DNA of 64,000 nucleotides, taken from IMG/VR virus record IMGVR_UViG_3300045999_008996, positions 1-64,000 of that record, one strand, 5' to 3'. Below, piece by piece: positions 44,721 through 61,738 of the stretch; the stretch's first letter is position 1, and the number at the start of each line of letters is the position of its first letter. The position numbers and the translations under genes are program-made. The notes under the pieces are model-generated. The model did not search any database and was not told the origin of the DNA. It saw only the letters and a program-made list of their open reading frames with translations.

Positions 44721-44861
44721 TCAGAAATCAATCACATTCAGAGTCCCCATAGTATCACCTTCCTCTGCAACATTATCACTGACGATTGCATCCAGAATCG
44801 AAAGAATCTCATCACCAGTGTTACCTTGTGCCAGCATCGAAAGCATCACGGTCTTGGACAT
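44721..44861 (-). CDS. Microprotein paralog A, 46 aa
   Basis: MSKTVMLSMLAQGNTGDEILSILDAIVSDNVAEEGDTMGTLNVIDF. Confidence 0.75.
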   Translation of the reverse strand: MSKTVMLSMLAQGNTGDEILSILDAIVSDNVAEEGDTMGTLNVIDF

Positions 44862-44955
44862 AATAACGAAGAAAAGTGTTAGTTAGTGTGTGGTGAGTTG
44901 GGTATATTTTATGACCCCCCAATTCGTAGGGTCACTGATACTAACCGTGGTGTGG

Positions 44956-45093
44956 TCAGTTAGTTGCAAAGACCTCAGCGCAACTATCAATACCCTCCTG
45001 CTCAATGTCGGAGACGATAACATCGAGGATGGACAGAATCTCATCACCAGTGTTACCTTGTGCCAGCATGGAGAGGATAACGGTCTTGGACAT
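44956..45093 (-). CDS. Microprotein paralog B, 45 aa
   Basis: MSKTVILSMLAQGNTGDEILSILDVIVSDIEQEGIDSCAEVFATN. Confidence 0.75.
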   Translation of the reverse strand: MSKTVILSMLAQGNTGDEILSILDVIVSDIEQEGIDSCAEVFATN

Positions 45094-45162
45094 AATGAAG
45101 AAGAAAAGTGTTGTGAACTGTGAGTGCCTAGTTTATACTCATTCGACAGGAGTTGGTGTTAC

Positions 45163-45462
45163 TTAGAAGTCGAACACATTGATGTTGATTTCCTGGATAT
45201 TGACCATGGGGTCAGCATACTTAACACCATCAGGAGTTGCCACAATACCCTCATCATTCAGTGCGTCGATAGTGTCAACATAGTTGCCCATATCGCGGCA
45301 GAGGTAATAGAGATTGACGTCATTCTGCAACCACAGTGCAACATTCCAGGTCTCATAATTTGCCCAACCGTTATAGGTGGTGTCGGTCAGATTTGCTTGA
45401 AAAGTAGCAGTCATTGGTAAGTCTTGAGTGTTAGCGGGGCGGTGAACTTGTGTGCCCCTCAT
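45163..45462 (-). CDS. Hypothetical protein (YNGWANYETWNVALW family)
   Basis: Starts at the ATG of repeat copy 1; second Met at residue 17. Confidence 0.75.
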   Translation of the reverse strand: MRGTQVHRPANTQDLPMTATFQANLTDTTYNGWANYETWNVALWLQNDVNLYYLCRDMGNYVDTIDALNDEGIVATPDGVKYADPMVNIQEININVFDF

Positions 45463-45492
45463 ACTACTAAGACACTTTCAAGGTGAGTAACT

Positions 45493-45915
45493 TTAATGGA
45501 TGCGGTCCTGAATATCATTGAGGACCGTAGATAAGACTTCCACACTATCCTCACCGTTCTCTTCTAACTGTTGCATAACGTCTTGCAGTTGGGGTAGAAT
45601 AGCAGTGGTAATCTGTGGCACTCTGATAATACTCATTTCGCCCAGATGCTTATACTTTAGAGGTCTTCCTCCAGCAATAGTTTTGGGACGAAACTTACTG
45701 TCTTTTTTAGACTTTTCAATGTGGCATTTGTTACATAAAAGTTGGCACTTTGATAACTCTTCTAACAGAACTTCCTTAGGTTTACTATAACCTGCAGCAA
45801 TATTGAATGACTTTGTAGAAGGGTCAATATGGTCAAACTCTAATGCTTCTGTGCAACCACATTCTACACACTTTCCACCCAACTTTTCAATTAGAATTTC
45901 CCTTAATAAGTTCAT
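45493..45915 (-). CDS. HNH endonuclease with C-terminal extension
   Basis: CVECG...FDHIDP...CQLLCNKCH; late promoter TATAAATA 45943-45950. Confidence 0.85.
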   Translation of the reverse strand: MNLLREILIEKLGGKCVECGCTEALEFDHIDPSTKSFNIAAGYSKPKEVLLEELSKCQLLCNKCHIEKSKKDSKFRPKTIAGGRPLKYKHLGEMSIIRVPQITTAILPQLQDVMQQLEENGEDSVEVLSTVLNDIQDRIH

Positions 45916-46013
45916 AGGTATTTTGATAACTTAATACGTCGTTATTTATAGGTTTTTTGAGGTATTACGTTATCAAAACTTAAACGCCTTATTTGGTATA
46001 AATTGCTACCAAA

Positions 46014-46187
46014 TTACCATCTATCGGGTGTACTTAGGTCTTCTACGTAAGCATCACACTTCTCTGCAGGTTCCAACTTGAAGAGTTTCTCCCAGTCAAT
46101 TTGATGTGGGTCGAAGTCAGGAAACGCAGAGATATCTAGAGTGATGCGATAACGAACCTTCTGTGCCTGAGTGTATGCTACTGACAT
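46014..46187 (-). CDS. Hypothetical protein, 57 aa
   Basis: MSVAYTQAQKVRYRITLDISAFPDFDPHQIDWEKLFKLEPAEKCDAYVEDLSTPDRW; GGAG and promoter upstream. Confidence 0.7.
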   Translation of the reverse strand: MSVAYTQAQKVRYRITLDISAFPDFDPHQIDWEKLFKLEPAEKCDAYVEDLSTPDRW

Positions 46188-46214
46188 AAGTGCGCTCCTG
46201 TGTGTTATGAAGGT

Positions 46215-46243
46215 ACTATAAGATGCCTGGGCGAAAATGTCAA
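46215..46243 (-). promoter_or_regulatory. Sigma70 promoter
   Basis: TTGACA-N17-TATAGT. Confidence 0.8.
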
Positions 46244-46314
46244 TGGTCTGGGGGTATTTAGGCGGTCCTGGTGGATTTAAGCAGGGGAATTGTGAGGATT
46301 TTGTGACCCTGTGG

Positions 46315-46344
46315 TTGACAAAAGTGCTGTTCTTATGTTATGCT
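46315..46344 (+). promoter_or_regulatory. Plus-strand sigma70 promoter facing non-coding AT-rich DNA
   Basis: TTGACA-N18-TATGCT with extended -10 TG. Confidence 0.6.
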
Positions 46345-46570
46345 CGGTAAGAAGACAAGACCTCGACACGTTTATAATGTATCAGCACACATTCTCTGGC
46401 ACATTATAAGATAATAGAGACGATTAAAGGCACTTAATTGATACGAATTCATATCATTATCACACATTAATAACAATAATTATCAGGCATTTAATTCGAA
46501 CGTTTATATTTAAATTGATATTTTTAATTGATTTTATTGTTTTTTTAACGTTATTTTGGCATAAAAGCAT

Positions 46571-46597
46571 AAAAAAAGAGGGTAGAAGTACCCTCTC
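46571..46597 (-). terminator. Rho-independent terminator
   Basis: AGAGGGTA/TACCCTCT stem with U-tract on minus strand. Confidence 0.8.
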
Positions 46598-46606
46598 TAT
46601 CTTATA

Positions 46607-46843
46607 TCAATCAATCGCTAATCTGTACCTTGCATAATCCTCTGCATCAGATCTTTTACGGAATCGTGCTTCTTCTCCTTCAAATCTAAGAGGCAAATAC
46701 CTATACTTCTTGCCTTCCTTAGTCATTACAATTCGGGAGAATAGATGCAGTGAGTAACTACCATCCTCCGTTCTTTGTGCTTCTTTCTTTACAATGAAAG
46801 GCAGAACTTGTTGGTCGTTGAATGAGGACTTAGAGAGTAACAT
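46607..46843 (-). CDS. Hypothetical protein
   Basis: 78 aa ORF. Confidence 0.65.
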   Translation of the reverse strand: MLLSKSSFNDQQVLPFIVKKEAQRTEDGSYSLHLFSRIVMTKEGKKYRYLPLRFEGEEARFRKRSDAEDYARYRLAID

Positions 46844-46866
46844 TTCGATTTAAGAGTGTAGGATTA

Positions 46867-47058
46867 TCAGGAGAATCGTGATGCAAACTTAAGTGCATCT
46901 TTTTCTTTTGTATAAGTCTTGAACTCTTTAGTCACCCAGTAAGCATCACCTCGCAGAGTGTTTTCTTTGAACACATCAACCTGAACTGAGAACTTGTTAT
47001 TATACTCTCTGATGTAAACTCTGGTATCACCAATCTTTGGACGTTCCATGGTTTGCAT
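46867..47058 (-). CDS. Hypothetical protein
   Basis: 63 aa ORF. Confidence 0.6.
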   Translation of the reverse strand: MQTMERPKIGDTRVYIREYNNKFSVQVDVFKENTLRGDAYWVTKEFKTYTKEKDALKFASRFS

Positions 47059-47074
47059 ATTCTTTTGCTTGGTT

Positions 47075-47263
47075 TTAATTGGTGATCAATTCAGCAGGAC
47101 TACCACACGATTTGTAGAACTCAATCATACGATTTGCTTCCTCTAGTGTAGAGAACGTTTGCGTCCTCCATTGTTGTTGATAAGGTGTAAAGTAACGGAT
47201 TTTGAACATTTTGTTTGATTCAGTTAGAGTGAAGAATGGTGAGCATCTTCTGGTAATACTCAT
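47075..47263 (-). CDS. Hypothetical protein (real start probably MFKIRYF)
   Basis: WRTQTFSTLEEANRMIEFYKSCGSPA. Confidence 0.6.
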   Translation of the reverse strand: MSITRRCSPFFTLTESNKMFKIRYFTPYQQQWRTQTFSTLEEANRMIEFYKSCGSPAELITN

Positions 47264-47387
47264 CTGCTTCTACTTCACATTGATGAGACTGTGTTGCATC
47301 TTCAATCTCGTATTGTTTCATACTCAGAGAGTGAATTACGCTGTCTAGAAGATTAGTCAGTGCTTCAATCTTTTGTTCGTTAGTCAT
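47220..47387 (-). CDS. Hypothetical protein, 55 aa
   Basis: MTNEQKIEALTNLLDSVIHSL...; TGATG coupling. Confidence 0.6.
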   Translation of the reverse strand: MTNEQKIEALTNLLDSVIHSLSMKQYEIEDATQSHQCEVEADEYYQKMLTILHSN

Positions 47388-47725
47388 CAGTTAAGCACCA
47401 TACCTTCAGTGAAAGGAATTGTGTTACCGTTATCAATCACAAACCATTCAAAATCACGTTGAAAGATACGGGCATCATTTCCGTGCTCTTTCAGAATAGC
47501 ATTGAGACGTGATTTGGTTGTTGGAGTTTTATACCCACAGGTGTAAAGTTCAAGGAAGGTATCACCAATCGTTGCGATATGATTGCCATGCAGATAAACA
47601 TATGAAGCATCACGTTCGGGCGAATAGAGAACTTCAGTGTTGTCAGACTTCCAGTCTTTGCAGTTGGTAATAGCATTGTTCATTTTGGATTCAATAACTC
47701 GCATGGTTGGAGATTCAGTGGTCAT
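47387..47725 (-). CDS. Hypothetical phage protein
   Basis: VYLHGNHIA, TPTTKSRLNAIL; starts at repeat ATG. Confidence 0.8.
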   Translation of the reverse strand: MTTESPTMRVIESKMNNAITNCKDWKSDNTEVLYSPERDASYVYLHGNHIATIGDTFLELYTCGYKTPTTKSRLNAILKEHGNDARIFQRDFEWFVIDNGNTIPFTEGMVLN

Positions 47726-47766
47726 ACTACTAGGACACTTTCAAGGTGAGTAACTTTAATTGCGAC

Positions 47767-47973
47767 TTACAGAGAAAATACTTTAGATGTCACAAGTTGG
47801 GAATCTTGATCATACTTTTCATAAGACCAAGTACCTTCGGTTTGTTCAACATAAGAGTGAACATTGTCGTTACAATCTTCCTTCCAAAAGGCACCAGTTT
47901 CGGGTTGGAAGAAATAACCAGATGCGATAAGTGCGTCAGTGAATGTCATTGTGATTTCAGCGTTAAGTAACAA
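47767..47973 (-). CDS. Hypothetical protein
   Basis: 68 aa ORF. Confidence 0.55.
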   Translation of the reverse strand: MLLNAEITMTFTDALIASGYFFQPETGAFWKEDCNDNVHSYVEQTEGTWSYEKYDQDSQLVTSKVFSL

Positions 47974-47976
47974 TAA

Positions 47977-48186
47977 TCAGGCAGCGATTGCAGACTCTAG
48001 ACATACCTCACGGGTTTCGAGTAGAACATAATCACACTCAGATTCCAGTTCCTTCAGGTAGGCATTGGCAGCAGAGAAACAATCAAACAAGCGGAGAGAT
48101 CTGAAGTTCTCACCTTCATAATCAAATCCACCGATAACAGCGTAGACAGACATTTTGGACATTTGAGACATTTGGGAAGTGGTCAT
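47977..48186 (-). CDS. Hypothetical protein
   Basis: VYAVIGGFDYEGE; starts at repeat ATG. Confidence 0.7.
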   Translation of the reverse strand: MTTSQMSQMSKMSVYAVIGGFDYEGENFRSLRLFDCFSAANAYLKELESECDYVLLETREVCLESAIAA

Positions 48187-48216
48187 ACTACTAGGACACT
48201 TTCAAGGTGAGTAACT

Positions 48217-48357
48217 TTAATTGGTCGTCACATATGGTCCTTGAACATCACAAAACTCTAGAAGAAAGTAATCAATAGTGACGCCAAGTTCATTTGCAAA
48301 CTGTAGATTTTCTTGATATTGTTCCTGAGAAAGAATGTAGAAATCAGTCTCAATCAT
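48217..48357 (-). CDS. Hypothetical protein, 46 aa
   Basis: MIETDFYILSQEQYQENLQFANELGVTIDYFLLEFCDVQGPYVTTN; TAA lies in repeat copy 3. Confidence 0.6.
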   Translation of the reverse strand: MIETDFYILSQEQYQENLQFANELGVTIDYFLLEFCDVQGPYVTTN

Positions 48358-48644
48358 GGTCGATTTGTCCTCCTTGAAGTTCAACATTGTCTAGTACAGT
48401 AACAATCTGCTGGTTTGGAGTAAGGTAGTCGATTTGCAGAACATTCGGCGCGATTTCAGTTGCTCCGATAATCGTAGATGCTAACAGGATTTCAATCATT
48501 GTTGCGGTGAGATAATGTCTGCTACAGTGTGCAATGTATTGGAAGTGATGTTGCGAACTCCAGGTGAGAGTATCATCGCAACAATGAAGATTAGTGTAAA
48601 TGTCTTCACTTTACAAGGAGACTTAAATGTAAGACTTTTTGCCA

Positions 48645-48878
48645 TCAGTTAATGACATCATACTTCAGGGATTTGACACACCAACCCGTGTTGTCAGAGA
48701 TACAATCGACAAGATCTTCCTCACTCGGAGGTGCCCAAAGGCAAGATTTTGCATCATCTACGATCTCTTTCTTCTCATACTCAGTGAGATCTTCATAGTC
48801 GAAATCGAACTCAATTTCAGTGATTTTGTAGTAGTTCATACTTTTAGTGTTAGTCAGGGTTTCAGTGGAAGTGGTCAT
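48645..48878 (-). CDS. Hypothetical protein
   Basis: ITEIEFDF...ISDNTGWCVKSL; starts at repeat ATG. Confidence 0.7.
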   Translation of the reverse strand: MTTSTETLTNTKSMNYYKITEIEFDFDYEDLTEYEKKEIVDDAKSCLWAPPSEEDLVDCISDNTGWCVKSLKYDVIN

Positions 48879-48908
48879 ACTACTAGGACACTTTGGAGGT
48901 GAGTAACT

Positions 48909-49118
48909 TTAATTGAACTCGATGTTCCAGTCAACATCTGCAGTAAGATTGACCCAAAAGTGATTCTTACCGTTTGCAGAGGTTAGAAACACTTTGTTTC
49001 CGTGATGTTGCTCCACAATACATTCATTATTGCGGTTCATTAAGTTACAGAAACGATTCTGTGCTTTCTTACTCTTGGGTGTCACAAATGCAGTCATCAT
49101 ATTCAGGTTGTTGTCCAT
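48909..49118 (-). CDS. Hypothetical protein
   Basis: Start codon and stop codon both supplied by flanking repeats. Confidence 0.75.
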   Translation of the reverse strand: MDNNLNMMTAFVTPKSKKAQNRFCNLMNRNNECIVEQHHGNKVFLTSANGKNHFWVNLTADVDWNIEFN

Positions 49119-49165
49119 ACTACTAGGACACTTTAGAGGTGAGTAACTTTAATTGACGTAGAGTT

Positions 49166-49522
49166 TCAGTTACGCATCAGGGCAAGTGCATCATTCTCAC
49201 TGATGCTATCCTCAGGCAGTTGGATATTGCGAGCACAGGCAACTGCATCAGCAAAATTATCAAAAGTGCCAAAGGATTTCTGATTACCACACCAGCAACC
49301 TTTGTACTCATAAAACATTGCTTCGACTGAGAATACATCACCTTTTGTTTTAGAATCTACACTGTGCTTGATGTACACTTTACCGTCATATCGGGTGTAC
49401 TTATCAAACATATTGCTCTTGAAAGTACGAATGAAATCAGCGATAGACTCAGCAGTCAGATTGATATTCTGAGAGAACAGATTTGCGTAATGAACTGTCA
49501 TTTTAGTGGTTTCAGTGGTCAT
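49166..49522 (-). CDS. Hypothetical protein
   Basis: 118 aa; starts at repeat ATG. Confidence 0.7.
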   Translation of the reverse strand: MTTETTKMTVHYANLFSQNINLTAESIADFIRTFKSNMFDKYTRYDGKVYIKHSVDSKTKGDVFSVEAMFYEYKGCWCGNQKSFGTFDNFADAVACARNIQLPEDSISENDALALMRN

Positions 49523-49557
49523 ACTACTAGGACACTTTGGAGGTGAGTAACTTTAAT

Positions 49558-50175
49558 TCAGAACAGATTGCGACCGAATTGACCACACAAATAGAATGCC
49601 ATTCCTTTATCCTTAAGGGTCACATCTGCAAAGGTCAGAGGTACATAGCGACCGTTGGTTTTAGATGCTTTGGTGCGAATCTGCAGAAGTCCGTTAGGAC
49701 CAGTGATGGTAGAAAGTTCTTTGCCTGCATCGAAAAGTGTGCGGATGCTGTTACAAATGAACTCATAATCCTCACGCAATTCTTGATAGTGTGCAGCATG
49801 AGTTTCTTCATTCAGAATAACACTGCCCACATAATCGTTGTTGCGAGTGAATCCAACATATACAGTTTGCTTCAGTTTCTGTCCAACCTTGCTATCATCA
49901 AATGACACTGCATCTTCGATGATTTCAGATAGACAATGCTTCAACTGTGTGGCAGCAATAGATTCACCAACTGTAAAAGTCTTAATTTCTCCATCCTCCA
50001 AATCTTTCAGGTCGGAGGAGTTAGGAACTCCGAGGGCAGTTTCTAACAGTTGCCCGCGAGCACCTTTGTTCTTGCCAGGTTTCTCAAATGCACTGAAGTC
50101 AGTTACATTCAGTTTGGCAAATACTTCAAGGGTGGTTAGTTTAGTCATGGTAAAATTAGGAAGTGAAATCACCAA
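49558..50175 (-). CDS. MutH/Sau3AI-family PD-(D/E)xK endonuclease
   Basis: NKGARGQLLETALG...D...EIKT, LQIRTKA, AFYL resemble MutH motifs; true start probably MTKLTT. Confidence 0.75.
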   Translation of the reverse strand: MVISLPNFTMTKLTTLEVFAKLNVTDFSAFEKPGKNKGARGQLLETALGVPNSSDLKDLEDGEIKTFTVGESIAATQLKHCLSEIIEDAVSFDDSKVGQKLKQTVYVGFTRNNDYVGSVILNEETHAAHYQELREDYEFICNSIRTLFDAGKELSTITGPNGLLQIRTKASKTNGRYVPLTFADVTLKDKGMAFYLCGQFGRNLF

Positions 50176-50346
50176 TCAGTCAACAACAGAGTAACAAGCA
50201 ACCCAGGAAGGAATCCCAGAGAGTGATAACGAACCATTGCGAGCATCGCAATAGTCTTCTGCCTCTTTTTCAGAGTAGAAAGGTCCAATGTACTCTGGAG
50301 AATCGAGTGCTTCAGACCAAAATCGAACGGTAAAAGTGTTTCTCAT
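50176..50346 (-). CDS. Hypothetical protein, 56 aa
   Basis: MRNTFTVRFWSEALDSPEYIGPFYSEKEAEDYC...; its only Met is the repeat ATG. Confidence 0.7.
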   Translation of the reverse strand: MRNTFTVRFWSEALDSPEYIGPFYSEKEAEDYCDARNGSLSLSGIPSWVACYSVVD

Positions 50347-50380
50347 ACTACTAGGACACTTTAGAGGTGAGTAACTTTAA

Positions 50381-50524
50381 TTACTTGAAAGTTCCATTGA
50401 CACCAACAACCTTTGCAGTAGGATTGCGTGCTTGTGCAGTTTCGCGGGCATCTTTTGGAGAGTTAGCATACACTTCCTCCTTGAAGACTTTACCGCCAAC
50501 GTATAACTCAACAATGTACTTCAT
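50381..50524 (-). CDS. Hypothetical protein, 47 aa
   Basis: MKYIVELYVGGKVFKEEVYANSPKDARETAQARNPTAKVVGVNGTFK. Confidence 0.7.
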   Translation of the reverse strand: MKYIVELYVGGKVFKEEVYANSPKDARETAQARNPTAKVVGVNGTFK

Positions 50525-50721
50525 AGTGTTTGAAACTCCTGTGCTTCTTTGATGTTAGAATTGTAGTATTTGGTGATTAGATCATTACACAATGGTTTCC
50601 ATTCTTCATCAATACCAGAGTGCTCACAATCTCGTGCTTGATATAACAAACGCAGTATGCAAGTTTCCTCATCTTTTGTGAACTTAACGCGATTGAAAGT
50701 GTAACCGTCAGTCATAATCAA
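50521..50721 (-). CDS. Hypothetical protein
   Basis: 66 aa ORF. Confidence 0.6.
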   Translation of the reverse strand: MIMTDGYTFNRVKFTKDEETCILRLLYQARDCEHSGIDEEWKPLCNDLITKYYNSNIKEAQEFQTL

Positions 50722-50885
50722 ACAGGGGTAACTTCAACGGAACGGATAAGATTTGTGCGGTCTTGTGCTAGGTAATCATCAGCGATTTTACCACAAGATG
50801 AACGCGATTGAATGAACTTTTCTTCGTATAGGTTCTCATCTTCATCAGGAACCCAATACTCAATCAGCATACGATAAGTGTTCAT
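50718..50885 (-). CDS. Hypothetical protein, 55 aa
   Basis: MNTYRMLIEYWVPDEDENLYEEKF...; TGATG coupling. Confidence 0.6.
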   Translation of the reverse strand: MNTYRMLIEYWVPDEDENLYEEKFIQSRSSCGKIADDYLAQDRTNLIRSVEVTPV

Positions 50886-51133
50886 CAATAGTGTGCTTCA
50901 GAAGTGTCAAGAACTTCGCTGTACTTAGCGATACCATCATAGCAACGCTTTGCCATTTCAGAATCACCCTCAGCGACATAACCTTTCAGAAACTCGAAGC
51001 AGTATTTGATACGCAGTTCGGGTGCAACTGCAGCGAGTTGTTGTTGACGACGCTCGTAAGCGGCGTTGTATGCAAACATTTCACGATCTTCGAGAGAGAT
51101 GTTGTGAAACTTGCGGTCGGTAGTGTTGTTCAT
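50885..51133 (-). CDS. Hypothetical protein
   Basis: 82 aa; starts at repeat ATG. Confidence 0.7.
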   Translation of the reverse strand: MNNTTDRKFHNISLEDREMFAYNAAYERRQQQLAAVAPELRIKYCFEFLKGYVAEGDSEMAKRCYDGIAKYSEVLDTSEAHY

Positions 51134-51174
51134 ACTACTAGGACACTTTGGAGGTGAGTAACTTTAATTACCCG

Positions 51175-51429
51175 TTACCACGTTCCTCTTTGGACGTGGA
51201 TTTTGCGAATCTCCTGATAAATGAACTGACGAAGTTTAGGTTCGGTAGTGTTATCAAAAGCATAATAAAGACGATTTAGATACTCATTCTGTGTGGCACC
51301 TATGTTACCATTACCACCGATGTCATTGAGTGATGAACCTGCCTTCACCTTTGAAACACCGAAATTGCCAGTGATGTTACCTTTGGTGCGAAACTGTGGT
51401 TTAATCTTTGAGAGATTAGAGTAAGTCAT
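51175..51429 (-). CDS. Hypothetical protein
   Basis: 84 aa ORF. Confidence 0.7.
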   Translation of the reverse strand: MTYSNLSKIKPQFRTKGNITGNFGVSKVKAGSSLNDIGGNGNIGATQNEYLNRLYYAFDNTTEPKLRQFIYQEIRKIHVQRGTW

Positions 51430-51599
51430 TCATCCTCTTCATAAGGGAACATTTCGTCATACTCTTCGTCAGTTAGAGTAAGATACTGAACATTAGCGTT
51501 CTTGTGCTCTTCAGTATACATTAACTGATAGTGTGCGAAAGAAGATGAGTCGCTGCTAGCATACTCCAGCAGACCATCAACGAAACAAAGGTAGTTCAT
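51426..51599 (-). CDS. Hypothetical protein, 57 aa
   Basis: MNYLCFVDGLLEYASS...; ATGA overlaps on both sides. Confidence 0.6.
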   Translation of the reverse strand: MNYLCFVDGLLEYASSDSSSFAHYQLMYTEEHKNANVQYLTLTDEEYDEMFPYEEDE

Positions 51600-52027
51600 T
51601 TTGCGTACAGATAACCACCCGACCAGTCTGCATTTTCCAGCAGATATTCACGATCTTTGATCAATCGAAGGTCATAACGAACACCTTTCGCAGGAGATTT
51701 CCAAGTGGCAGACTTATACACTTCACCAGTGTTCTTGTCAATGAAGCAATGAACACTGCGCGAACCACCACCATTCACCAGAATGACTTTGTGATACTTT
51801 TTACCAGTCTCAATGGTATAGTCAATATCACACTTGCCAGACTTGAGTTCATCAACCTTGCGAAGGTGATACTCTACACCTTCACCACGTTCTGCGGAAC
51901 GCTGATGACCACGAATAGAATACTGACGATAGTTGTCTTTCAGTGCTTCAATCAGCAGCAGAGTGTTCTTATACACATTCTCTGCGATGGTTTGTTGTGC
52001 TTGTGCTTGCATTGTAGGAGTGCTCAT
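51596..52027 (-). CDS. Hypothetical phage protein
   Basis: GKKYHKV...SVHCFIDKNTGEVYKSATWKSPAKGVRY. Confidence 0.8.
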   Translation of the reverse strand: MSTPTMQAQAQQTIAENVYKNTLLLIEALKDNYRQYSIRGHQRSAERGEGVEYHLRKVDELKSGKCDIDYTIETGKKYHKVILVNGGGSRSVHCFIDKNTGEVYKSATWKSPAKGVRYDLRLIKDREYLLENADWSGGYLYAK

Positions 52028-52062
52028 ACTACTAGGACACTTTGGGGGTGAGTAACTTTAAT

Positions 52063-52980
52063 TCAACCCCAATTCTTCACCATTGTAAAGTTGGCATGAG
52101 AGAATGTTTCGCGGTCCACTACTTTGTAAGATCCAAACTTGTTATGAATGACATAACCTTCGTGGAAACTTGACACTCCCCAGAGATAACATTCAATCTC
52201 ATCTTCTTCATGAATGAACAGGAACAAATCGTCTTTGATAGACTTCACCAGTTTCCACAATCTGATGAGGTTCTTGTCACAATCACATTTTTCTGCAATT
52301 TCATCTTCATCCACGTCTCTTTCCTCACGGATGCAGGCATTGATCTCTTTTTTGATTTGTGATGCTTTACGGTCGCTCACAAACTCACATAGAGTGCTCA
52401 TTTGTTTAGCAAACTTACACACATCCTCCAAATCTTCACGATAAGGATTCAGGGACACCGCAGGTTGCACAAACAAGCATTGTTTGGTGCTTGCAAACTT
52501 GCTGGTGATAGGGTGTGCTACCATCTCAGGCAGTCGGTCCCCAGTGTAGTAAGTGTGAGGACAAATAACAATCTCCTGACGCACAATCTCAGGGAACTTA
52601 TAGGTAATAGTATTGGGTTTGAAAGTATCCAACCCACTACCAAAACCAATAAAATCACCCTGATACACTTTCTTAGTGCGAGGCAGGAAATCCAGACAGA
52701 AGATGAGGATTTGTGTTACGTTTGGTTGATGCCCAAAGTGCAGAAAGATGTCATCTTCGGTGTAACACAGGCGAATCTTTTGCTTGTTAAATGCTGCTTT
52801 GGTGCAGACAAAAAACTTACCATTCTCAGGATTAGTGCCCCACACAATAGCAGGAGCACCATCCATCTTTACGCTGATAGTAGAATCAGCGGAGAACCAA
52901 TCAAGAACCGAAAGATCACCATTAAGGATGCTATCTTCGGGGTGTTCAATGTGTTTGTTCTGCATTGGTTGCTTGCTCAT
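52063..52980 (-). CDS. DUF6267-like protein with ligase/nucleotidyltransferase KxDG motif
   Basis: NKHIEHPED, SVKMDGAPAIVWG, YQGD, HEGYV, KVVDRETFS. Confidence 0.7.
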   Translation of the reverse strand: MSKQPMQNKHIEHPEDSILNGDLSVLDWFSADSTISVKMDGAPAIVWGTNPENGKFFVCTKAAFNKQKIRLCYTEDDIFLHFGHQPNVTQILIFCLDFLPRTKKVYQGDFIGFGSGLDTFKPNTITYKFPEIVRQEIVICPHTYYTGDRLPEMVAHPITSKFASTKQCLFVQPAVSLNPYREDLEDVCKFAKQMSTLCEFVSDRKASQIKKEINACIREERDVDEDEIAEKCDCDKNLIRLWKLVKSIKDDLFLFIHEEDEIECYLWGVSSFHEGYVIHNKFGSYKVVDRETFSHANFTMVKNWG

Positions 52981-53019
52981 ACTACTGGGACACTTTGGAG
53001 GTGAGTAACTTTAATTAAG

Positions 53020-53549: not shown

Positions 53550-53617
53550 AATTTGGGTTAGAAACTTCAGTGAGGAACGACCCTCACACTACTAGGACAC
53601 TTTAGAGGTGAGTAACT

Positions 53618-53797
53618 TTAATTCACGGGAAGTTTTGCCATTGACACACCTTTTTTATGGTCAGTGATATACTTTCTGGCAGAACTTTCAGTCCTACAAA
53701 GTTTCTCAAGTTGCTGACCATTGTGAATGATAAGATACTGGTTGCCGTAGGGAATGGCAGCGTATTCATCACGAAACATTGTAAATCCTTCTTTCAT
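53618..53797 (-). CDS. Hypothetical protein, 59 aa
   Basis: MKEGFTMFRDEYAAIPYGNQYLIIHNGQQL...; TAA lies in repeat copy 11. Confidence 0.65.
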   Translation of the reverse strand: MKEGFTMFRDEYAAIPYGNQYLIIHNGQQLEKLCRTESSARKYITDHKKGVSMAKLPVN

Positions 53798-54437: not shown

Positions 54438-55682
54438 TCACCGCCGCACCACACTGATAGCAGGTTCTCCCTTCTGGAAGATAGTATCAACAACCGACTG
54501 CACAGCGCGAGCGGTGCTGATACCAACCTTGCTGTAGACAGGAATGCAAACAAGACCGAACGATTTGCTATATTGTGCCAGGTTGCCAGGTTCGATACGT
54601 CCATCACGCAAACCTTTGGCATCATCGTGATGCAAACGGATGCAACGTCCGATGGTCTGACTGATACCAATGAAGTCCATATTACGCAGGAACAACACTG
54701 CTTCCAAACCACTCACATTGATACCCTCAGCGAGGATGCTGTGGTGTAGAACAACGAACTTCTTATCGTTATCCTTACCCCAGGCAGATAGGGTATCAAA
54801 GAATACCTCGCGGTTGACCTTGCGTCCATCAATAACTGCACCAGTCTTAGCAGTAATATACATCCAAGAGAAACCACGTTCCTCTAGTTCAGCACAGAAA
54901 TCAGTTTCCGACACCAGCGAAACGATTTGCTTGGTTGCCTTAGAACAAATTAGAATCTTACCGACTTTGTTCTCATCAATCGTTTCCAGCAGATTCTCTG
55001 CATCTCGGTCAAAGTTAGTCTGCTTGCCAGTTACCATAGGGAGTTGCTTGACGATAACTTTAGGAGGCACAATATAACCACCCTCAACCAACTCAGGAGC
55101 AGGAACTTTGCAGATTACCTGACCATAAACAGCAGCATCATTCATCCCAGGTTTGCCAGTGGCAAGGGAATGTTTAGGAGTTGCAGTAAAGAAGTAGCAG
55201 CGACGTGCGTTAGCAGCAAAGTGCTCAGTTGCAGGGAAAAAGTGACGCTGAACACTGTTATGTGCTTCATCAAAGTAAATTGTATCCACATCAACTTCTG
55301 CCACTTGAAGACGCGACAGAGAGTTGTAGGTGGTTACAATCAGGCGATGATTGTCAGCATTTGCATTAACCCAGTTGCGAATCTCACGCGGGCGAGTAGA
55401 AGATTCGTGATGAGTTTCACCACTGTGAATATGAAAAACTTTTGCGTTGGTGATAAACTCCATAAACTCAGCGGAGAGTTGCTCTGCCAGGAGAATACGA
55501 GGGGCAACAACAACAATCGTCTGTGGAGTTTCAGACTGCAACTCACGCAGACAATCATAGATCATCTTGAGAGTCTTACCACCACCAGTAGGAACAATAA
55601 TTTGACCCTTATTATGCTTCGCCATAGCAGCAACACCACGTTCTTGGTGCGGACGGAGTTGGATTTGCATTGGTATCATCAT
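54438..55682 (-). CDS. SF2 DEAH helicase (restriction-subunit-like)
   Basis: LRPHQ, PTGGGKT, YFDEAH, FTATP, LAEGINV, QTIGRCIR motifs. Confidence 0.9.
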   Translation of the reverse strand: MMIPMQIQLRPHQERGVAAMAKHNKGQIIVPTGGGKTLKMIYDCLRELQSETPQTIVVVAPRILLAEQLSAEFMEFITNAKVFHIHSGETHHESSTRPREIRNWVNANADNHRLIVTTYNSLSRLQVAEVDVDTIYFDEAHNSVQRHFFPATEHFAANARRCYFFTATPKHSLATGKPGMNDAAVYGQVICKVPAPELVEGGYIVPPKVIVKQLPMVTGKQTNFDRDAENLLETIDENKVGKILICSKATKQIVSLVSETDFCAELEERGFSWMYITAKTGAVIDGRKVNREVFFDTLSAWGKDNDKKFVVLHHSILAEGINVSGLEAVLFLRNMDFIGISQTIGRCIRLHHDDAKGLRDGRIEPGNLAQYSKSFGLVCIPVYSKVGISTARAVQSVVDTIFQKGEPAISVVRR

Positions 55683-55714
55683 CTAGTATTAGAGCACTTT
55701 GGAGGTGAGTAACT

Positions 55715-55954
55715 TTAATTCGCGGTCTGTTTATATACCTTCAGTTTATCAATCACACCTTGCATTGTAGCACGATTGTATCCATTCGCAAAGGATGGAC
55801 TTCTCTCAGTTTCGGGATTAGAACTGAAATCAACATTCTTAGCGACATTAACACCCTCTTGAAGAAGGCGAATGACATCATCAAAGACAAAATCAGGGAT
55901 TTGGATGTAATTCATTGTTCTCAGTGGTTTGATAAGTAAAGACAAAAATAGCAC
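55715..55954 (-). CDS. Hypothetical protein (start probably MNYIQ)
   Basis: TAA lies in repeat copy 12. Confidence 0.6.
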   Translation of the reverse strand: MLFLSLLIKPLRTMNYIQIPDFVFDDVIRLLQEGVNVAKNVDFSSNPETERSPSFANGYNRATMQGVIDKLKVYKQTAN

Positions 55955-56147: not shown

Positions 56148-56207
56148 TGCGTGAGTGTTGTGCTTACACTACTAGGACACTTTGGAGGTGAGTAACTTTA
56201 ATTGGAG

Positions 56208-56914: not shown

Positions 56915-57604
56915 TTAGATGTCATCATTGTTCAATTCTTCTACCAATATAATATCTTTATGTTTTTTTCTTTTACCTTTTGCAACCTGATAGATTAGTG
57001 AATCATTATAATTATTTTGTTTACACCAATTATGTAAACCAGTCATCTCTAGTGTTCTACCATCTTCAAATGTAATGATCCAGGTTTTCCATAATCTATT
57101 TGTTTTATGCGTTTCTGTTGGTTTTCTTTGTTTTAATCTGTGTTTTTTCATTTCCTCTGGATTATCCTTTAGTTTTTTCCATCTTTCCGCGTAATATTTT
57201 GAAATCCTTTCTTTGTTTTTTTTGTAGTAATCAGATGCTTTCTTTTTCAATTCATCTTCACTATATTTTTTCGTCACTTTAGATAAATGTCTCTTCTGCT
57301 CTTCAGTCATAACTCTACCTGAAGATCCATCACCACCATCAGTTTTATTATGGAGAATACCAGTTCCTAAATCTTTTCTTCCAAAGACAGCAATCATATA
57401 GATTTCGTGCTTAAATGCTTCTTCTTCAGTAAGATTTTGCTTAAGAAATATTATTTTAGATTTATCTTTAGGAGATTTGGTGTCATTTTTTCTCCTTCTA
57501 TATGCTCGGTTTCCTTTACCTTTACCAATGTAGTAAGGAGTTCTATCCTCACGCAGATAAGCGTAGGTATAATAGTTATTCATTCTTGTCTTAAAGAGTC
57601 GCAT
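56915..57604 (-). CDS. GIY-YIG-like putative homing endonuclease (likely start MNNYY at 57583)
   Basis: YTYAYLREDRTPYYIGKG, AFKHEIYMI, LHNKTDGGDG; late promoter 57608-57615. Confidence 0.75.
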   Translation of the reverse strand: MRLFKTRMNNYYTYAYLREDRTPYYIGKGKGNRAYRRRKNDTKSPKDKSKIIFLKQNLTEEEAFKHEIYMIAVFGRKDLGTGILHNKTDGGDGSSGRVMTEEQKRHLSKVTKKYSEDELKKKASDYYKKNKERISKYYAERWKKLKDNPEEMKKHRLKQRKPTETHKTNRLWKTWIITFEDGRTLEMTGLHNWCKQNNYNDSLIYQVAKGKRKKHKDIILVEELNNDDI

Positions 57605-57679
57605 TTATATTTATATAATAAGAGGGACATTTCTGCCCCTTTTCATTTGCTTTTAGATGCGACTCTTAAGCACTAATAT

Positions 57680-57948: not shown

Positions 57949-58083
57949 TCAGTAGTCAATGTTAGACTTAAGATATTCATTCATATTAAAATCATCTTGT
58001 TCTTCAATCAATTCAACAAGATCTTTTTCATTAAAGTCAAATCCAGCGATTTCTTCAATTTGAATGTCGTCGAAGCAGTCCAT
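57949..58083 (-). CDS. Small acidic protein, 44 aa
   Basis: MDCFDDIQIEEIAGFDFNEKDLVELIEEQDDFNMNEYLKSNIDY; after repeat copy 14. Confidence 0.6.
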   Translation of the reverse strand: MDCFDDIQIEEIAGFDFNEKDLVELIEEQDDFNMNEYLKSNIDY

Positions 58084-58131
58084 AACTTGTTTGTTGCTTA
58101 CATTACTAGGACACTTTAGAGGTGAGTAACT

Positions 58132-58713
58132 TTAATTGCGACTCATAATTGCTCTCATTTCTCTTCTTTTTTGTGCCTGCTGAGCACTTGCTTCGTGCTC
58201 CATTTCTCTCTGAGCATGTGCTTCTCTTGCTCTTTTTCTTGATAACTGACTTTTTGCAATCAATTTATTATAATAATTGGGTTCCATTGTAGGAGTTTGC
58301 TCAGTCTGCAATTCTCTCTTAATTTCCGATTTTAATGCTTCTCTTTCTCTTTGTGCAGATAATCTTTCTTTCTGTCTTGATTGATAATCGGAAACCTTTT
58401 GTTTTTGTGCTACCATTTGTTTCTTTTGTCTCTGACGAAGTTCTTGTCTTCGCTGTTGCAAATCTTCTGTGATTTTATTAACTGATTTTGCTAACTTTTT
58501 CAATCTCTTTGTTACTGCTTTTCCACCACTACGCTTTACAACTAACTTATCAATTTCTTTCTTTTTTGGTTTACCCAGTGGACCATCATAACTCTGGAGA
58601 GTATAAGAAATATTACCTTCACTATCTTTCTTATAAGTTCCAGGAACTGCATGTGGGGGAGTATCAGGTTTCTTACCTTCGCAGATTTGATAGAACTCTC
58701 TAAATGTCAGCAT
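58132..58713 (-). CDS. Basic putative internal head protein
   Basis: MLTFREFYQICE N-terminus; AATAAATA 58733-58740; TAA in repeat copy 14. Confidence 0.65.
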   Translation of the reverse strand: MLTFREFYQICEGKKPDTPPHAVPGTYKKDSEGNISYTLQSYDGPLGKPKKKEIDKLVVKRSGGKAVTKRLKKLAKSVNKITEDLQQRRQELRQRQKKQMVAQKQKVSDYQSRQKERLSAQREREALKSEIKRELQTEQTPTMEPNYYNKLIAKSQLSRKRAREAHAQREMEHEASAQQAQKRREMRAIMSRN

Positions 58714-59680: not shown

Positions 59681-59923
59681 TCAGGTTGTAAAAGATTCAA
59701 CTACTGCAGATTCTACATCCTCAGCAAGAGCATAAGTCCTTGCGCTTAACACATTTTCACGAAGAGTGGTGTAATACTGTTCATAGAAGTTGTCATCATC
59801 TTCTGCAGCAATCAAATCAAAACATTCATTGTCGTTTTCCGCAATCACATTCCAAAGTCCACCATATTCACTGGAAGGAAAAGGAATGTAGTGGTCAACC
59901 AGATAAAGAAACTTTTGTGCCAT
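59681..59923 (-). CDS. Hypothetical protein
   Basis: VDHYIPFPSSEYGGLWNVIA. Confidence 0.75.
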   Translation of the reverse strand: MAQKFLYLVDHYIPFPSSEYGGLWNVIAENDNECFDLIAAEDDDNFYEQYYTTLRENVLSARTYALAEDVESAVVESFTT

Positions 59924-60872: not shown

Positions 60873-60919
60873 TTGAGTGTTGTGCTTACATTACTAGGAC
60901 ACTTTGGAGGTGAGTAACT

Positions 60920-61738
60920 TTAATAGACTGCAATCAGTTCACTTGCTTTCTTCCTACTGCCACCTTTTGCAGCAATCGTTCTTGTTACTTGAATCGGATA
61001 GATTGTAGCATTTTTATAGAGTTCTCTTGTGATAGGAACATCATGATTTGATACAATCACTTTAATATCTTTTGCAGCAAGAGATTCTGCAAGTTGTGCT
61101 AATTGTTCTTGTTGAACATCAGTGAATCCATCGGTTGCATAATTTGTGAAGTTTGCAGTATCTGATGCAGGAACATACGGTGGGTCAAAGTAGACAACAT
61201 CACCTGCTTCCAAATCTTCATAAAGAGATAAATCTTCAAAAGAAAGTGATGTGAACCTCACCAGTTGTTTGGATAGGAAATACATCCTGAAGTTCATCAT
61301 CTCTTCGGAAGGGCAAGATGGTTTGTCATACTTACCAAAGGGAACATTAAATCCACCTTTGCTATTATATCGCGACAAACCATTGAAACAATGACGATTC
61401 AAGTAAATGAACAGTCGTGCCCTCTCTGTAGTGTCTATTGCTTGATTAAAGTGCTCTCGCAACTCTAAATATGCTTCTTTGGTATTATTCTCTGGAGTGA
61501 ATAGTTCTTCGCAATATTGAATGAAACTATCATCATTTGGATTTACCAAATTCTGATAGATTGATACCAAATCTTTATTCACATCATTGAGAATATATTG
61601 CTGTGCTGGTGTATTCAATGCAACAGCAAGACTACCACCAAAGGGTTCACAATAACGCTTTGGATAACCAATATGGGGAATAAGATGGGGCAGGACCCGA
61701 TATTTGTTTCCCGCCCACTTTAACGGTGGTTTGTTCAT
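60920..61738 (-). CDS. dam: DNA adenine methyltransferase (D12/Dam family)
   Basis: LKWAGNK, EPFGGS, RYNSKGGFNVPFG, YFDPPY motifs. Confidence 0.93.
   Translation of the reverse strand: MNKPPLKWAGNKYRVLPHLIPHIGYPKRYCEPFGGSLAVALNTPAQQYILNDVNKDLVSIYQNLVNPNDDSFIQYCEELFTPENNTKEAYLELREHFNQAIDTTERARLFIYLNRHCFNGLSRYNSKGGFNVPFGKYDKPSCPSEEMMNFRMYFLSKQLVRFTSLSFEDLSLYEDLEAGDVVYFDPPYVPASDTANFTNYATDGFTDVQQEQLAQLAESLAAKDIKVIVSNHDVPITRELYKNATIYPIQVTRTIAAKGGSRKKASELIAVY

What the first reader, a model, noticed from the sequence alone, without database searches (positions are those of the whole stretch)
45460..53016. The repeat supplies the in-frame start codon, suggesting leaderless translation
Seen: all 10 copies ending in ATG (copies 1-10) are in frame with the downstream ORF, and copy 12 has an in-frame ATG 2 nt further on. 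ORF 50176-50346 has no other Met, and ORF 48909-49118 takes both its start and stop from repeats. No SD precedes these ATGs. Copies 11, 13, 14 and 15 end in GTG/GTA and are followed by short leaders. Inference: +1 is the purine after TAGTAGT, giving leaderless mRNAs from a non-canonical promoter (-12..-7 would be TGTCCT). Alternative: TAGTAT is a sigma70 -10 and the ATG is used only on read-through RNA.
Basis: partly seen in the sequence, partly recalled or inferred. Interest (0 to 1): 0.65.

Follow-up and report, generated by a model that had tools for sequence, protein, structure and literature searches.

The report
Promoter repeat fused to start codons
A 36-base repeat that fills the gaps between small genes of a T4-like cyanophage ends exactly where many of those genes begin; comparison with relatives shows that its final ATG is a real start codon, most likely on messenger RNAs with no leader. 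It is a compact variant of known phage promoter cassettes and still lacks RNA proof.

Summary
Fifteen co-oriented copies of a 36-nt element lie between small minus-strand genes at 45.4-60.9 kb, and nowhere else in this complete 222.6-kb T4-like cyanophage (psbA and psbD present, no phage RNA polymerase). Ten copies are followed directly by an in-frame ATG. About 300 further copies were found in IMG/VR contigs and in the isolate SynMITS9220M01. ATG at this position is common when it is in frame (76%), rare when it is out of frame (21%), and near-universal when no other start exists (34/37). A diverged sub-family shows the same pattern. In several gene families the codons just after this ATG evolve as coding sequence with no other start available. 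The repeat therefore does supply the start codon, though this is obligatory for only 2 of the 10 window genes. For about 6 of them a conserved downstream ATG is the main start. That transcription starts at this A (leaderless mRNA) is the best-supported reading, at about 0.55, but it is unproven. The support is an invariant purine, 5' hairpins that begin there, leader lengths of 0 or at least 15 nt, and the geometry of canonical promoters in relatives. No RNA data could be obtained. The element is not sigma70-like. It behaves as a terminator-less, SD-less variant of PeSL-type promoter cassettes.

The parts
60890..60925 (-). element copy 15 (most upstream); GTA at +1, 17-nt leader
   Evidence: its TAA ends the Dam methyltransferase ORF 60920-61738
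58102..58137 (-). element copy 14; GTA, 18-nt leader to ORF 57949-58083
   Evidence: family F5 is GTA in 12 of 12 relatives
56168..56203 (-). element copy 13; GTA, 20-nt leader
   Evidence: family F13 relatives carry ATA with leaders of 21-26 nt
55685..55720 (-). element copy 12, most diverged; AG then ATGATG; heads the helicase gene 54438-55682
   Evidence: the conserved start is probably the ATG at +15, matching the Syn9 orthologue MQLR
53588..53623 (-). element copy 11; GTG, 38-nt leader with a hairpin that starts at +1
52981..53016 (-). element copy 10; ATG at +1 opens ORF 52063-52980 (DUF6267)
   Evidence: family F0 has ATG in 20 of 20 and its second ATG is not conserved
52028..52063 (-). 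element copy 9; ATG opens ORF 51596-52027 (DUF7717)
   Evidence: second ATG at codon 6 in 11 of 13 relatives
51134..51169 (-). element copy 8; ATG is the only usable start of ORF 50885-51133
   Evidence: next Met is at codon 19 and codons 7-18 vary only synonymously
50347..50382 (-). element copy 7; ATG is the only Met of ORF 50176-50346
49523..49558 (-). element copy 6; in-frame ATG, with the conserved start at codon 8 of ORF 49166-49522
   Evidence: family F9: relatives with leaders of 25-27 nt carry ATA
49119..49154 (-). element copy 5; ATG opens ORF 48909-49118, further Met at codons 7 and 8
48879..48914 (-). element copy 4; supplies the stop of ORF 48909-49118 and an in-frame ATG for ORF 48645-48878
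   Evidence: the profile start fits Met14
48187..48222 (-). element copy 3; in-frame ATG for ORF 47977-48186, with Met also at codons 6, 9 and 12
47726..47761 (-). element copy 2; in-frame ATG, but ORF 47387-47725 (Kyano_Gp96) conserves its start at codon 8
   Evidence: 13 of 15 relatives have ATA or ATC here
45463..45498 (-). element copy 1 (last); ATG followed by a GC hairpin; conserved start of ORF 45163-45462 at codon 17
   Evidence: the upstream ATG is out of frame in relatives
46575..46598 (-). intrinsic terminator that closes the unit started at copy 2
   Evidence: 10-bp stem followed by a T run

Best explanation
The repeat is a lineage-specific promoter cassette of a T4-like cyanophage (Kyanoviridae). 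It is read by the host's multisubunit RNA polymerase, probably with help from an unidentified specificity factor, because it does not look like a sigma70 site. The conserved block spans about -36 to +7. Its 5' end often holds the stop codon of the upstream gene, and transcription most likely begins at the invariant purine just after TAGTAGT. Where that purine is the A of ATG, the mRNA is leaderless and the ATG is the start codon. This is obligatory for some genes and gives an optional in-frame N-terminal extension for others. Where the triplet is GTA, ATA, ATC or GTG, the mRNA carries a 15-27-nt G-poor leader without a Shine-Dalgarno motif, or a longer leader that opens with a 5' hairpin. The cassettes also mark the junctions at which small genes are shuffled between related phages. 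Shown: the anatomy, the conservation, the use of the ATG in translation, and the absence of a phage RNAP. Inferred: promoter function, the exact +1, the early timing, and the helper factor.
For: The element is strand-specific, confined to intergenic gaps in a 15-kb block, and absent from the rest of the genome. About 250 copies occur in IMG/VR contigs and 10 in SynMITS9220M01, in the syntenic block upstream of gp6/gp7. Position +1 is A in 84% and G in 16% of copies and is never a pyrimidine; +2 is T in 97%. A[G/C]CA at +4..+7 is shared by coding and non-coding copies. ATG at +1 occurs in 109/144 in-frame contexts, 13/63 out-of-frame contexts, and 34/37 copies with no other ATG nearby. The family-level odds ratio is 4.75, p 0.003, and the pattern is replicated in the TATAGT sub-family. 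In the families that depend on this ATG, third-codon-position changes dominate right after it (375 against 154 and 143). The start at +1 is always ATG, never GTG or TTG. Leader lengths are 0 or at least 15 nt, matching the 14-27 nt leaders and the A/T at +1/+2 of this genome's own TGnTATAAT promoters. In 14 of 15 distinct strong leader hairpins the helix begins between -1 and +5. The P-SSM2 orthologue of the DUF6267 gene starts with the same codons, with its A as the 7th base after a perfect TATAAT; the S-RIM8 and ACG-2014f orthologues have ATA at that position plus 15-16-nt leaders. Leaders are G-poor (10% against 20.5%), and SD-like motifs occur in 2/82. No T7-type RNAP is encoded, with a valid positive control, and the only sigma-like gene is gp55-like. 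Cassette order is shuffled between contigs.
Against: With +1 at the purine, the -10 region would read TGTCCT with an invariant G at -11, which ordinary sigma70 holoenzyme should not melt, and no helper factor was identified. TAGTAT (-4..+2) fits the minimal TAnnnT, and TATAGT in the sister sub-family with the conserved A at +7 fits a canonical sigma70 geometry that would place the TSS downstream of the ATG. With no terminators between cassettes, read-through RNA must exist and could by itself explain why the ATG is translated. MAFFT places a 3-nt gap when aligning the element to canonical relatives, so homology does not fix the register. TATAAT-N6-ATG is not enriched genome-wide in P-SSM2. Copies are phylogenetically non-independent.
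Confidence: 0.55

Rival explanations
1. The element is a weak or atypical sigma70-type promoter whose -10 is TAGTAT (TAnnnT, -4..+2), or TAGTAG/TATAGT one register upstream. Transcription starts about +4 to +9, for example at the conserved A at +7. The repeat's ATG is then absent from the primary transcript and is translated only on read-through RNA from upstream cassettes.
For: T(-4), A(-3) and T(+2) are 97-99% conserved, and A at +4 and +7 is 82-97% conserved. SynMITS9220M01 reads GTTACT-17 nt-TATAGT-6 nt-A. There are no terminators between cassettes, so read-through is certain. MAFFT aligns the relatives' TATAAT partly over CCTAGT.
Against: Genes that depend on the +1 ATG would not be expressed from the promoter directly in front of them. 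The 5' arms of the leader hairpins (+1..+7) would be missing from the RNA. Leaders would be only about 7-19 nt, shorter than at this genome's canonical promoters. GTTACT is replaced by ATAGCT in one clade. The spacer and upstream half are almost invariant, which sigma70 contacts do not require. The consensus scan calls none of the copies.
Confidence: 0.22
2. The element is not a promoter. It is an RNA-level intercistronic signal on long early transcripts: either a processing site that creates 5' ends at or near the ATG, or an SD-independent internal initiation or re-initiation site.
For: The stop of the upstream gene lies 30-40 nt before the ATG in most copies. The ATG is clearly translated. 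The sequence is unlike sigma70 promoters.
Against: The element has no stable RNA fold (-1.5 kcal/mol, z 0.15) and no Rfam match. Orthologous genes in P-SSM2, S-RIM8, ACG-2014f and Syn9 carry recognisable promoters at the same place. The first copy of the array would need another promoter, and none is evident directly upstream. The conserved span, strand bias and purine at +1 are typical of promoters.
Confidence: 0.12
3. The repeat is mainly a recombination junction or selfish repeat that spreads gene cassettes, with no role of its own in expression.
For: Cassette order differs between related contigs, with the element at every junction. This resembles what is proposed for PeSLs (PMC4122927, PMC2839356).
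Against: Recombination alone does not explain the strict orientation, the purine at +1, the frame-dependent presence of ATG, the G-poor leaders, or conservation across sub-families that differ at defined positions.
Confidence: 0.05

Closest known systems
PeSLs (promoter-early stem-loops) of T4-like phages (Arbiol 2010, PMC2839356; Comeau 2014, PMC4122927)
   Same: Both are conserved intergenic cassettes in the hyperplastic small-ORF regions of T4-like myoviruses. [quoted passage not shown]
   Different: PeSLs have a terminator stem-loop, near-consensus sigma70 -35 and -10 boxes, a leader and a Shine-Dalgarno motif. This element has none of these and is only 36 nt long, so the ATG abuts the promoter. 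The same genome does hold PeSL-like units of hairpin plus TGnTATAAT elsewhere.
Early-gene regulatory element of cyanophage Syn9 (Doron et al. 2016, ISME J 10:1437; recalled from the abstract, paper not held here)
   Same: It is a non-T4-paradigm element reported to control early genes of T4-like cyanophages and said to be conserved among them. In Syn9, orthologues of two element-headed genes (MRKIE/Gp96-like and the helicase) lie in the syntenic block, the former behind a repeated Syn9 element.
   Different: There is no sequence match: a weight-matrix scan of Syn9 stays within shuffled scores and a pattern search finds 0 hits. The Syn9 repeat I found has about 5 copies, includes a TAnnnT box, and is always followed by a leader of at least 9 nt; it never abuts an ATG. 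Whether it is Doron's element, and where its TSS lies, could not be checked.
Leaderless mRNAs of phages and bacteria (e.g. lambda cI from PRM; Brock et al. 2008, cited in PMC5312081)
   Same: Shared features are a 5'-terminal AUG as the sole initiation signal, a strict need for AUG rather than GUG or UUG, no SD, and an A/C-rich region downstream.
   Different: Here the arrangement would be systematic: dozens of genes per genome share one promoter. It is also mixed with leadered transcripts from the same promoter. The 5' end has not been mapped.
Intergenic repeats of halovirus HF2 that carry promoters (PMC8707807)
   Same: These are short repeats (29 and 58 bp) between genes of a virus that were shown to be promoters.
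   Different: That system uses archaeal transcription machinery and unrelated sequence. No fusion to start codons was retrieved from that paper.
T7-class single-subunit RNAP promoters
   Same: They are long, almost invariant promoters of 20 nt or more that run into the first transcribed bases. There is a faint likeness in CTCAC...CTATAG.
   Different: No single-subunit RNAP gene is present in this genome or in SynMITS9220M01, while the positive control P-SSP7 was detected.

Membership tests
PeSL | Conserved intergenic cassette in a hyperplastic region of a T4-like phage, co-oriented with the genes | tested here: met
PeSL | Sigma70-like -35 and -10 hexamers about 17 nt apart | tested here: not met
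   The consensus scan calls none of the 15 copies, and every register lacks a key base.
PeSL | Stem-loop (terminator) just upstream of the promoter | tested here: not met
   The upstream stop codon lies within or a few nt before the element, and the element has no stable fold.
PeSL | Shine-Dalgarno motif and start codon at the 3' end | tested here: not met
   The start codon is present, but there is no SD and no leader in 10 of 15 copies. SD-like motifs occur in 2 of 82 leaders.
PeSL | Association with insertion, deletion and exchange of gene cassettes | tested here: met
   The order of element-headed families differs between 19 contigs.
Leaderless mRNA | Transcript 5' end at, or within a few nt of, the A of the AUG | not testable with these tools
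There are only indirect pointers.
Leaderless mRNA | The 5'-terminal codon is AUG and it is translated | tested here: met
   It is always ATG, never GTG or TTG, in the families that depend on it. Coding-type variation follows it and there is frame-dependent selection.
Leaderless mRNA | No Shine-Dalgarno motif upstream | tested here: met
   The fixed upstream sequence has no GGAG-type motif.
Sigma70 (group 1 sigma) promoter | -10 TAnnnT placed 6-8 nt upstream of a purine TSS | tested here: inconclusive
   TAGTAT at -4..+2 fits the hexamer but would place the TSS inside the gene. With the TSS at +1 the hexamer is TGTCCT.
Syn9-type early element | Sequence similarity to the Syn9 element | tested here: not met
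Syn9-type early element | Drives the earliest temporal class | not testable with these tools
   There are no expression data. The inference rests only on gene content (small ORFs, helicase) and on the existence of separate host-like and late classes.
T7-class promoter | Cognate single-subunit RNAP encoded by the phage | tested here: not met
   with a positive control

The most novel reading that the evidence does not exclude
A sub-lineage of T4-like cyanophages has replaced the host-type -10 box with a different, almost invariant recognition sequence (CTCACC-N3-AAAGTGTCC...). Host RNA polymerase would read it only with a phage-supplied, possibly virion-delivered, specificity factor, and it would start transcription exactly on the A of ATG. 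Dozens of early genes per genome would then be expressed as leaderless mRNAs from one 36-nt cassette that also carries the stop codon of the preceding gene and acts as the junction for cassette exchange.
Probability: 0.3. Interest if true: 0.7.

Novelty: new variant of a known kind. Interest (0 to 1): 0.5.

Why it matters
How T4-like cyanophages start their infection programme is poorly understood. They lack the T4 factors AsiA and MotA, and their early control element is reported to be unlike host promoters. This element is a sharply defined, very abundant candidate early promoter, and a cultured phage-host pair (SynMITS9220M01 on Synechococcus MIT S9220) carries it, so the question can be tested directly. 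If the leaderless reading holds, it would be a case of mass use of leaderless translation by a phage of marine picocyanobacteria. That could help early genes work across hosts whatever their SD usage. It also bears on annotation: gene callers choose inconsistently between the repeat's ATG and the next one. Finally, a nucleic-acid constraint reaching to about +12 gives unrelated proteins the same first residues, M-S/T-N/T-T.

Tried and rejected
2. Contigs holding the 305-aa protein came only from the source metagenome, so they gave no transcript ends.
3. Doron et al. 2016 (Syn9 TSS map) is not held, by DOI or by PMC id. Papers that cite it give no motif or TSS detail.
4. No held paper links cyanophages with leaderless mRNA or with the core sequence.
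5. Megablast of the region against phage isolates found nothing. The 39-mer found only SynMITS9220M01.
6. Structured-RNA reading: rejected.
7. T7-like promoter reading: rejected.
8. An extra sigma factor: only the gp55 type was found.
9. CACCTCC inside the element equals the anti-SD core of 16S rRNA. However, positions -18/-17 vary (CC, CT, TG, TC), so I regard the match as chance.
10. A -35 box at GTTACT: weakened by the ATAGCT clade.
11. Fixing the register by alignment to canonical promoters of orthologues: ambiguous, because MAFFT inserts a 3-nt gap.
12. TATAAT-N6-ATG enrichment in P-SSM2, ACG-2014f and S-RIM8: absent.
13. The number of leaders with MFE of -6 kcal/mol or lower is no higher than in shuffles (23 against 21). 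Only the position of the strong hairpins is informative.

Full report
WHAT THE WINDOW IS. The window is the first 64 kb of a complete 222,563-bp virus record with terminal repeats. Pfam and PHROG hits mark it as a T4-like myovirus: T4-type gp6, gp8, gp15, tail sheath, large terminase, and a 3,998-aa gp7-like baseplate wedge protein. The terminase is 86% identical to those of Synechococcus and Prochlorococcus myoviruses of the Kyanoviridae, and the genome carries psbA and psbD, so it is a cyanophage. Almost all genes lie on the minus strand. A block of about 100 small ORFs (median about 75 aa) spans 40-80 kb.

THE OBSERVATION. Read in the sense of the genes, the repeat is a 36-nt element that ends in TAGTAGT. 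There are 15 copies, all on the minus strand, between 45,463 and 60,925. Shuffles give none, and the rest of the 222-kb genome holds none. Ten copies are followed at once by ATG, and each of these opens an ORF. The other five carry GTA (three copies), GTG, or AG followed by ATGATG, and have leaders of 17-38 nt or 2 nt. ORF 50176-50346 has a single Met. ORF 48909-49118 takes its start from one copy and its stop from the TAA inside the next. The element is essentially the entire intergenic region: among 244 copies from this and related phages, the stop codon of the upstream gene is the element's own TAA in 90, and it overlaps or abuts the element's 5' end in a further 71 or so.

RELATIVES. The exact 26-nt core occurs in 46 IMG/VR stretches, which gave about 250 non-redundant copies. 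The cultured Synechococcus phage SynMITS9220M01 has 10-11 copies of a sister version ending in CCCTATAGT. They lie in the syntenic block upstream of gp6/gp7, and GenBank starts four CDSs (059, 060, 063, 071) at the terminal ATG. A further 16 IMG/VR stretches carry that version. Conservation runs from -36 to +2, counting the first base after TAGTAGT as +1. Position +1 is always a purine (A 84%, G 16%) and +2 is T in 97%. A at +4 and +7 is conserved in coding and non-coding copies alike. As a side effect, unrelated proteins begin with MSTT, MSNT or MTNT.

IS THE ATG A START CODON? Three lines of sequence evidence say yes.
- Frame. Of 153 ATG-type copies, 135 are in frame with, and open into, the longest downstream ORF. 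Among non-ATG copies the three frames are used 38:13:36.
- Conditional presence. Where a downstream ATG exists and the +1 triplet would be in frame and open, ATG is present in 109 of 144 copies. Where it would be out of frame or blocked, it is present in 13 of 63 (odds ratio 12). Where no other ATG lies within 60 nt, it is present in 34 of 37. Counted by gene family the odds ratio is 4.75, p = 0.003. The separate TATAGT sub-family replicates this: 17/27, 2/11 and 15/18.
- Coding signature. In families whose members never have another start nearby, the residues from about codon 4 onward are kept through synonymous changes, and differences fall mainly on third positions (375 against 154 and 143). 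Translation must therefore begin at the repeat's ATG.

The picture is mixed, however. Orthologues of ORF 47387-47725 (Kyano_Gp96) carry ATA or ATC in 13 of 15 phages and conserve the ATG at codon 8, which is also where the Pfam profile begins. ORFs 49166-49522, 48645-48878, 47977-48186 and 45163-45462 likewise have conserved downstream starts. Within the window the repeat's ATG is indispensable for two genes (50176-50346 and 50885-51133), likely used for two or three more (52063-52980, 51596-52027, 48909-49118), and an optional in-frame extension for the rest. One gene family occurs in both forms: the same ORF start either abuts the element or lies 17 nt downstream of an ATC-type copy.

IS IT A PROMOTER, AND WHERE IS +1? 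No RNA data could be obtained. Indirect evidence favours a promoter with +1 at the purine:
- The element is strictly co-oriented with the genes, and its conserved span resembles an RNAP footprint.
- It has no RNA structure and no Rfam match.
- Orthologues of the same genes in other cyanomyoviruses sit behind recognisable promoters at the same place. In P-SSM2 the DUF6267 orthologue begins with the same codons as in SynMITS9220M01, and its A is the seventh base after a perfect TATAAT. In S-RIM8 and ACG-2014f an extended -10 is followed, after six bases, by ATA and a 15-16-nt leader.
- This genome's own TGnTATAAT promoters have a purine at the canonical +1 in 21 of 26 cases, most often AT, and leaders of 14-27 nt. 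That matches the element's leadered class (15-27 nt) only if its +1 is the purine.
- Leader lengths are 0 or at least 15 nt, with almost nothing between.
- In 14 of 15 distinct strong leader hairpins the helix begins between -1 and +5, as expected for 5'-terminal stabilising hairpins.
- Leaders are G-poor (10% against 20.5%) and lack SD motifs (2 of 82).

Several points count against certainty. With this +1 the -10 region reads TGTCCT with an invariant G at -11. TAGTAT at -4..+2 fits TAnnnT, and the sister version has TATAGT with a conserved A seven bases on. MAFFT prefers a 3-nt gap when aligning to canonical relatives. Because no terminators separate the cassettes, read-through RNA could account for translation of the ATG. 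I therefore put the leaderless model at about 0.55 and a downstream TSS at about 0.22.

WHICH POLYMERASE? Neither this genome nor SynMITS9220M01 encodes a T7-type RNAP, while the positive control P-SSP7 was detected. The only sigma-like gene is a gp55-type late sigma. The sigma70 consensus scan calls none of the 15 copies, and the -35-like GTTACT is replaced by ATAGCT in one clade. The invariants are CTCACC, AAAGTGT and TA.AGT followed by RT. The host polymerase must be the enzyme. A helper factor is inferred, not found.

PLACE IN THE PROGRAMME. The genome has three promoter-like classes: this element (45-61 kb); hairpin plus extended -10 units of PeSL type (61-80 kb and elsewhere); and T4-late TATAAATA sites before structural genes. 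As I recall it, the abstract of Doron et al. 2016 states that in Syn9 a novel element drives early genes and host-like promoters drive middle genes. By analogy this element would be the early class, but Syn9 holds no detectable copy of it, and the paper could not be read.

COMPARISON AND NOVELTY. The closest known kind is the PeSL: it has the same genomic niche, the same end at the start codon, and the same link with cassette shuffling. The stem-loop, the sigma70 boxes, the leader and the SD are all missing, so I do not file the element as a PeSL. I rate it a new variant of a known kind. No held paper mentions the sequence or leaderless mRNAs in cyanophages. Interest is moderate: the anatomy and the selection signal are clean and a cultured system exists, but the central mechanistic claim still awaits a 5'-end map.

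Noticed in passing
G000 61-80 kb (mostly beyond the window), e.g. upstream of genes ending at G000 67236, 70006, 73266, 77321: These are PeSL-like units: a GC-rich hairpin with a T run, then an extended -10 (TGGTATAAT, TGGTATGAT and similar), and a 16-20-nt leader. This host-like promoter class is separate from the 36-nt element.
   Followed up: partly
window 57605-57650 and 45916-45960: T4-late-type TATAAATA boxes lie inside the element-bearing block. One follows a hairpin (57623-57640) ahead of ORF 56915-57604. The other precedes the weakly HNH-like ORF 45493-45915 (HNH hit at E 7e-4, below Pfam's cut-off).
   Followed up: partly
window 46200-46600: An AT-rich non-coding gap holds divergent near-consensus sigma70 promoters (minus strand 46243-46215, plus strand 46315-46344 with TG) and a two-way terminator at 46575-46598. 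It may encode a plus-strand non-coding RNA of about 250 nt. Rfam has no match.
   Followed up: no
window 59975-59947, minus strand: A near-perfect sigma70 promoter (TTGACA, 17 nt, TATACT) sits before ORF ending at 59923, inside the array of elements.
   Followed up: no
window 44781-44880 and 45013-45112: A tandem duplication with 88% identity over 100 nt and 232-nt spacing covers two paralogous ORFs of about 45 aa.
   Followed up: no
window +4 to +12 of each ATG-type copy: Unrelated small proteins share the first residues M-S/T-N/T-T, because the nucleotide-level conservation of the element runs into the coding region.
   Followed up: yes
L059-L060 (Syn9 NC_008296, 46.3-53.1 kb): Syn9 has about 5 copies of its own 22-nt element containing TATTCT and TATAAG, each preceded about 30-38 nt upstream by an AAGTGTCC-like box that resembles part of our element. 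It is always followed by a leader.
   Followed up: partly
L068 (ACG-2014f NC_026927, 40.5-51.4 kb): More than 12 copies of a roughly 50-nt cassette (C-rich box, TGCTATACT, then a fixed leader with AAGG) lie before small ORFs. This is a leadered, SD-bearing counterpart of our element.
   Followed up: no
window 60920-61738: A Dam-type N6-adenine methyltransferase lies directly upstream of the first element, and its stop codon is the element's TAA.
   Followed up: partly
window 27618-39614 and 20525-26041: Giant structural genes: a 3,998-aa gp7-like baseplate wedge protein and a 1,838-aa DUF4815 protein. Beyond the window, collagen-like GXY coding repeats lie at G000 96-100 and 116-118 kb, and repeats of about 150 nt at 102.8-108.3 kb.
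   Followed up: no
element positions -23 to -17: CACCTCC equals the anti-Shine-Dalgarno core of 16S rRNA. The last two positions vary between copies, so I take it as chance.
   Followed up: yes
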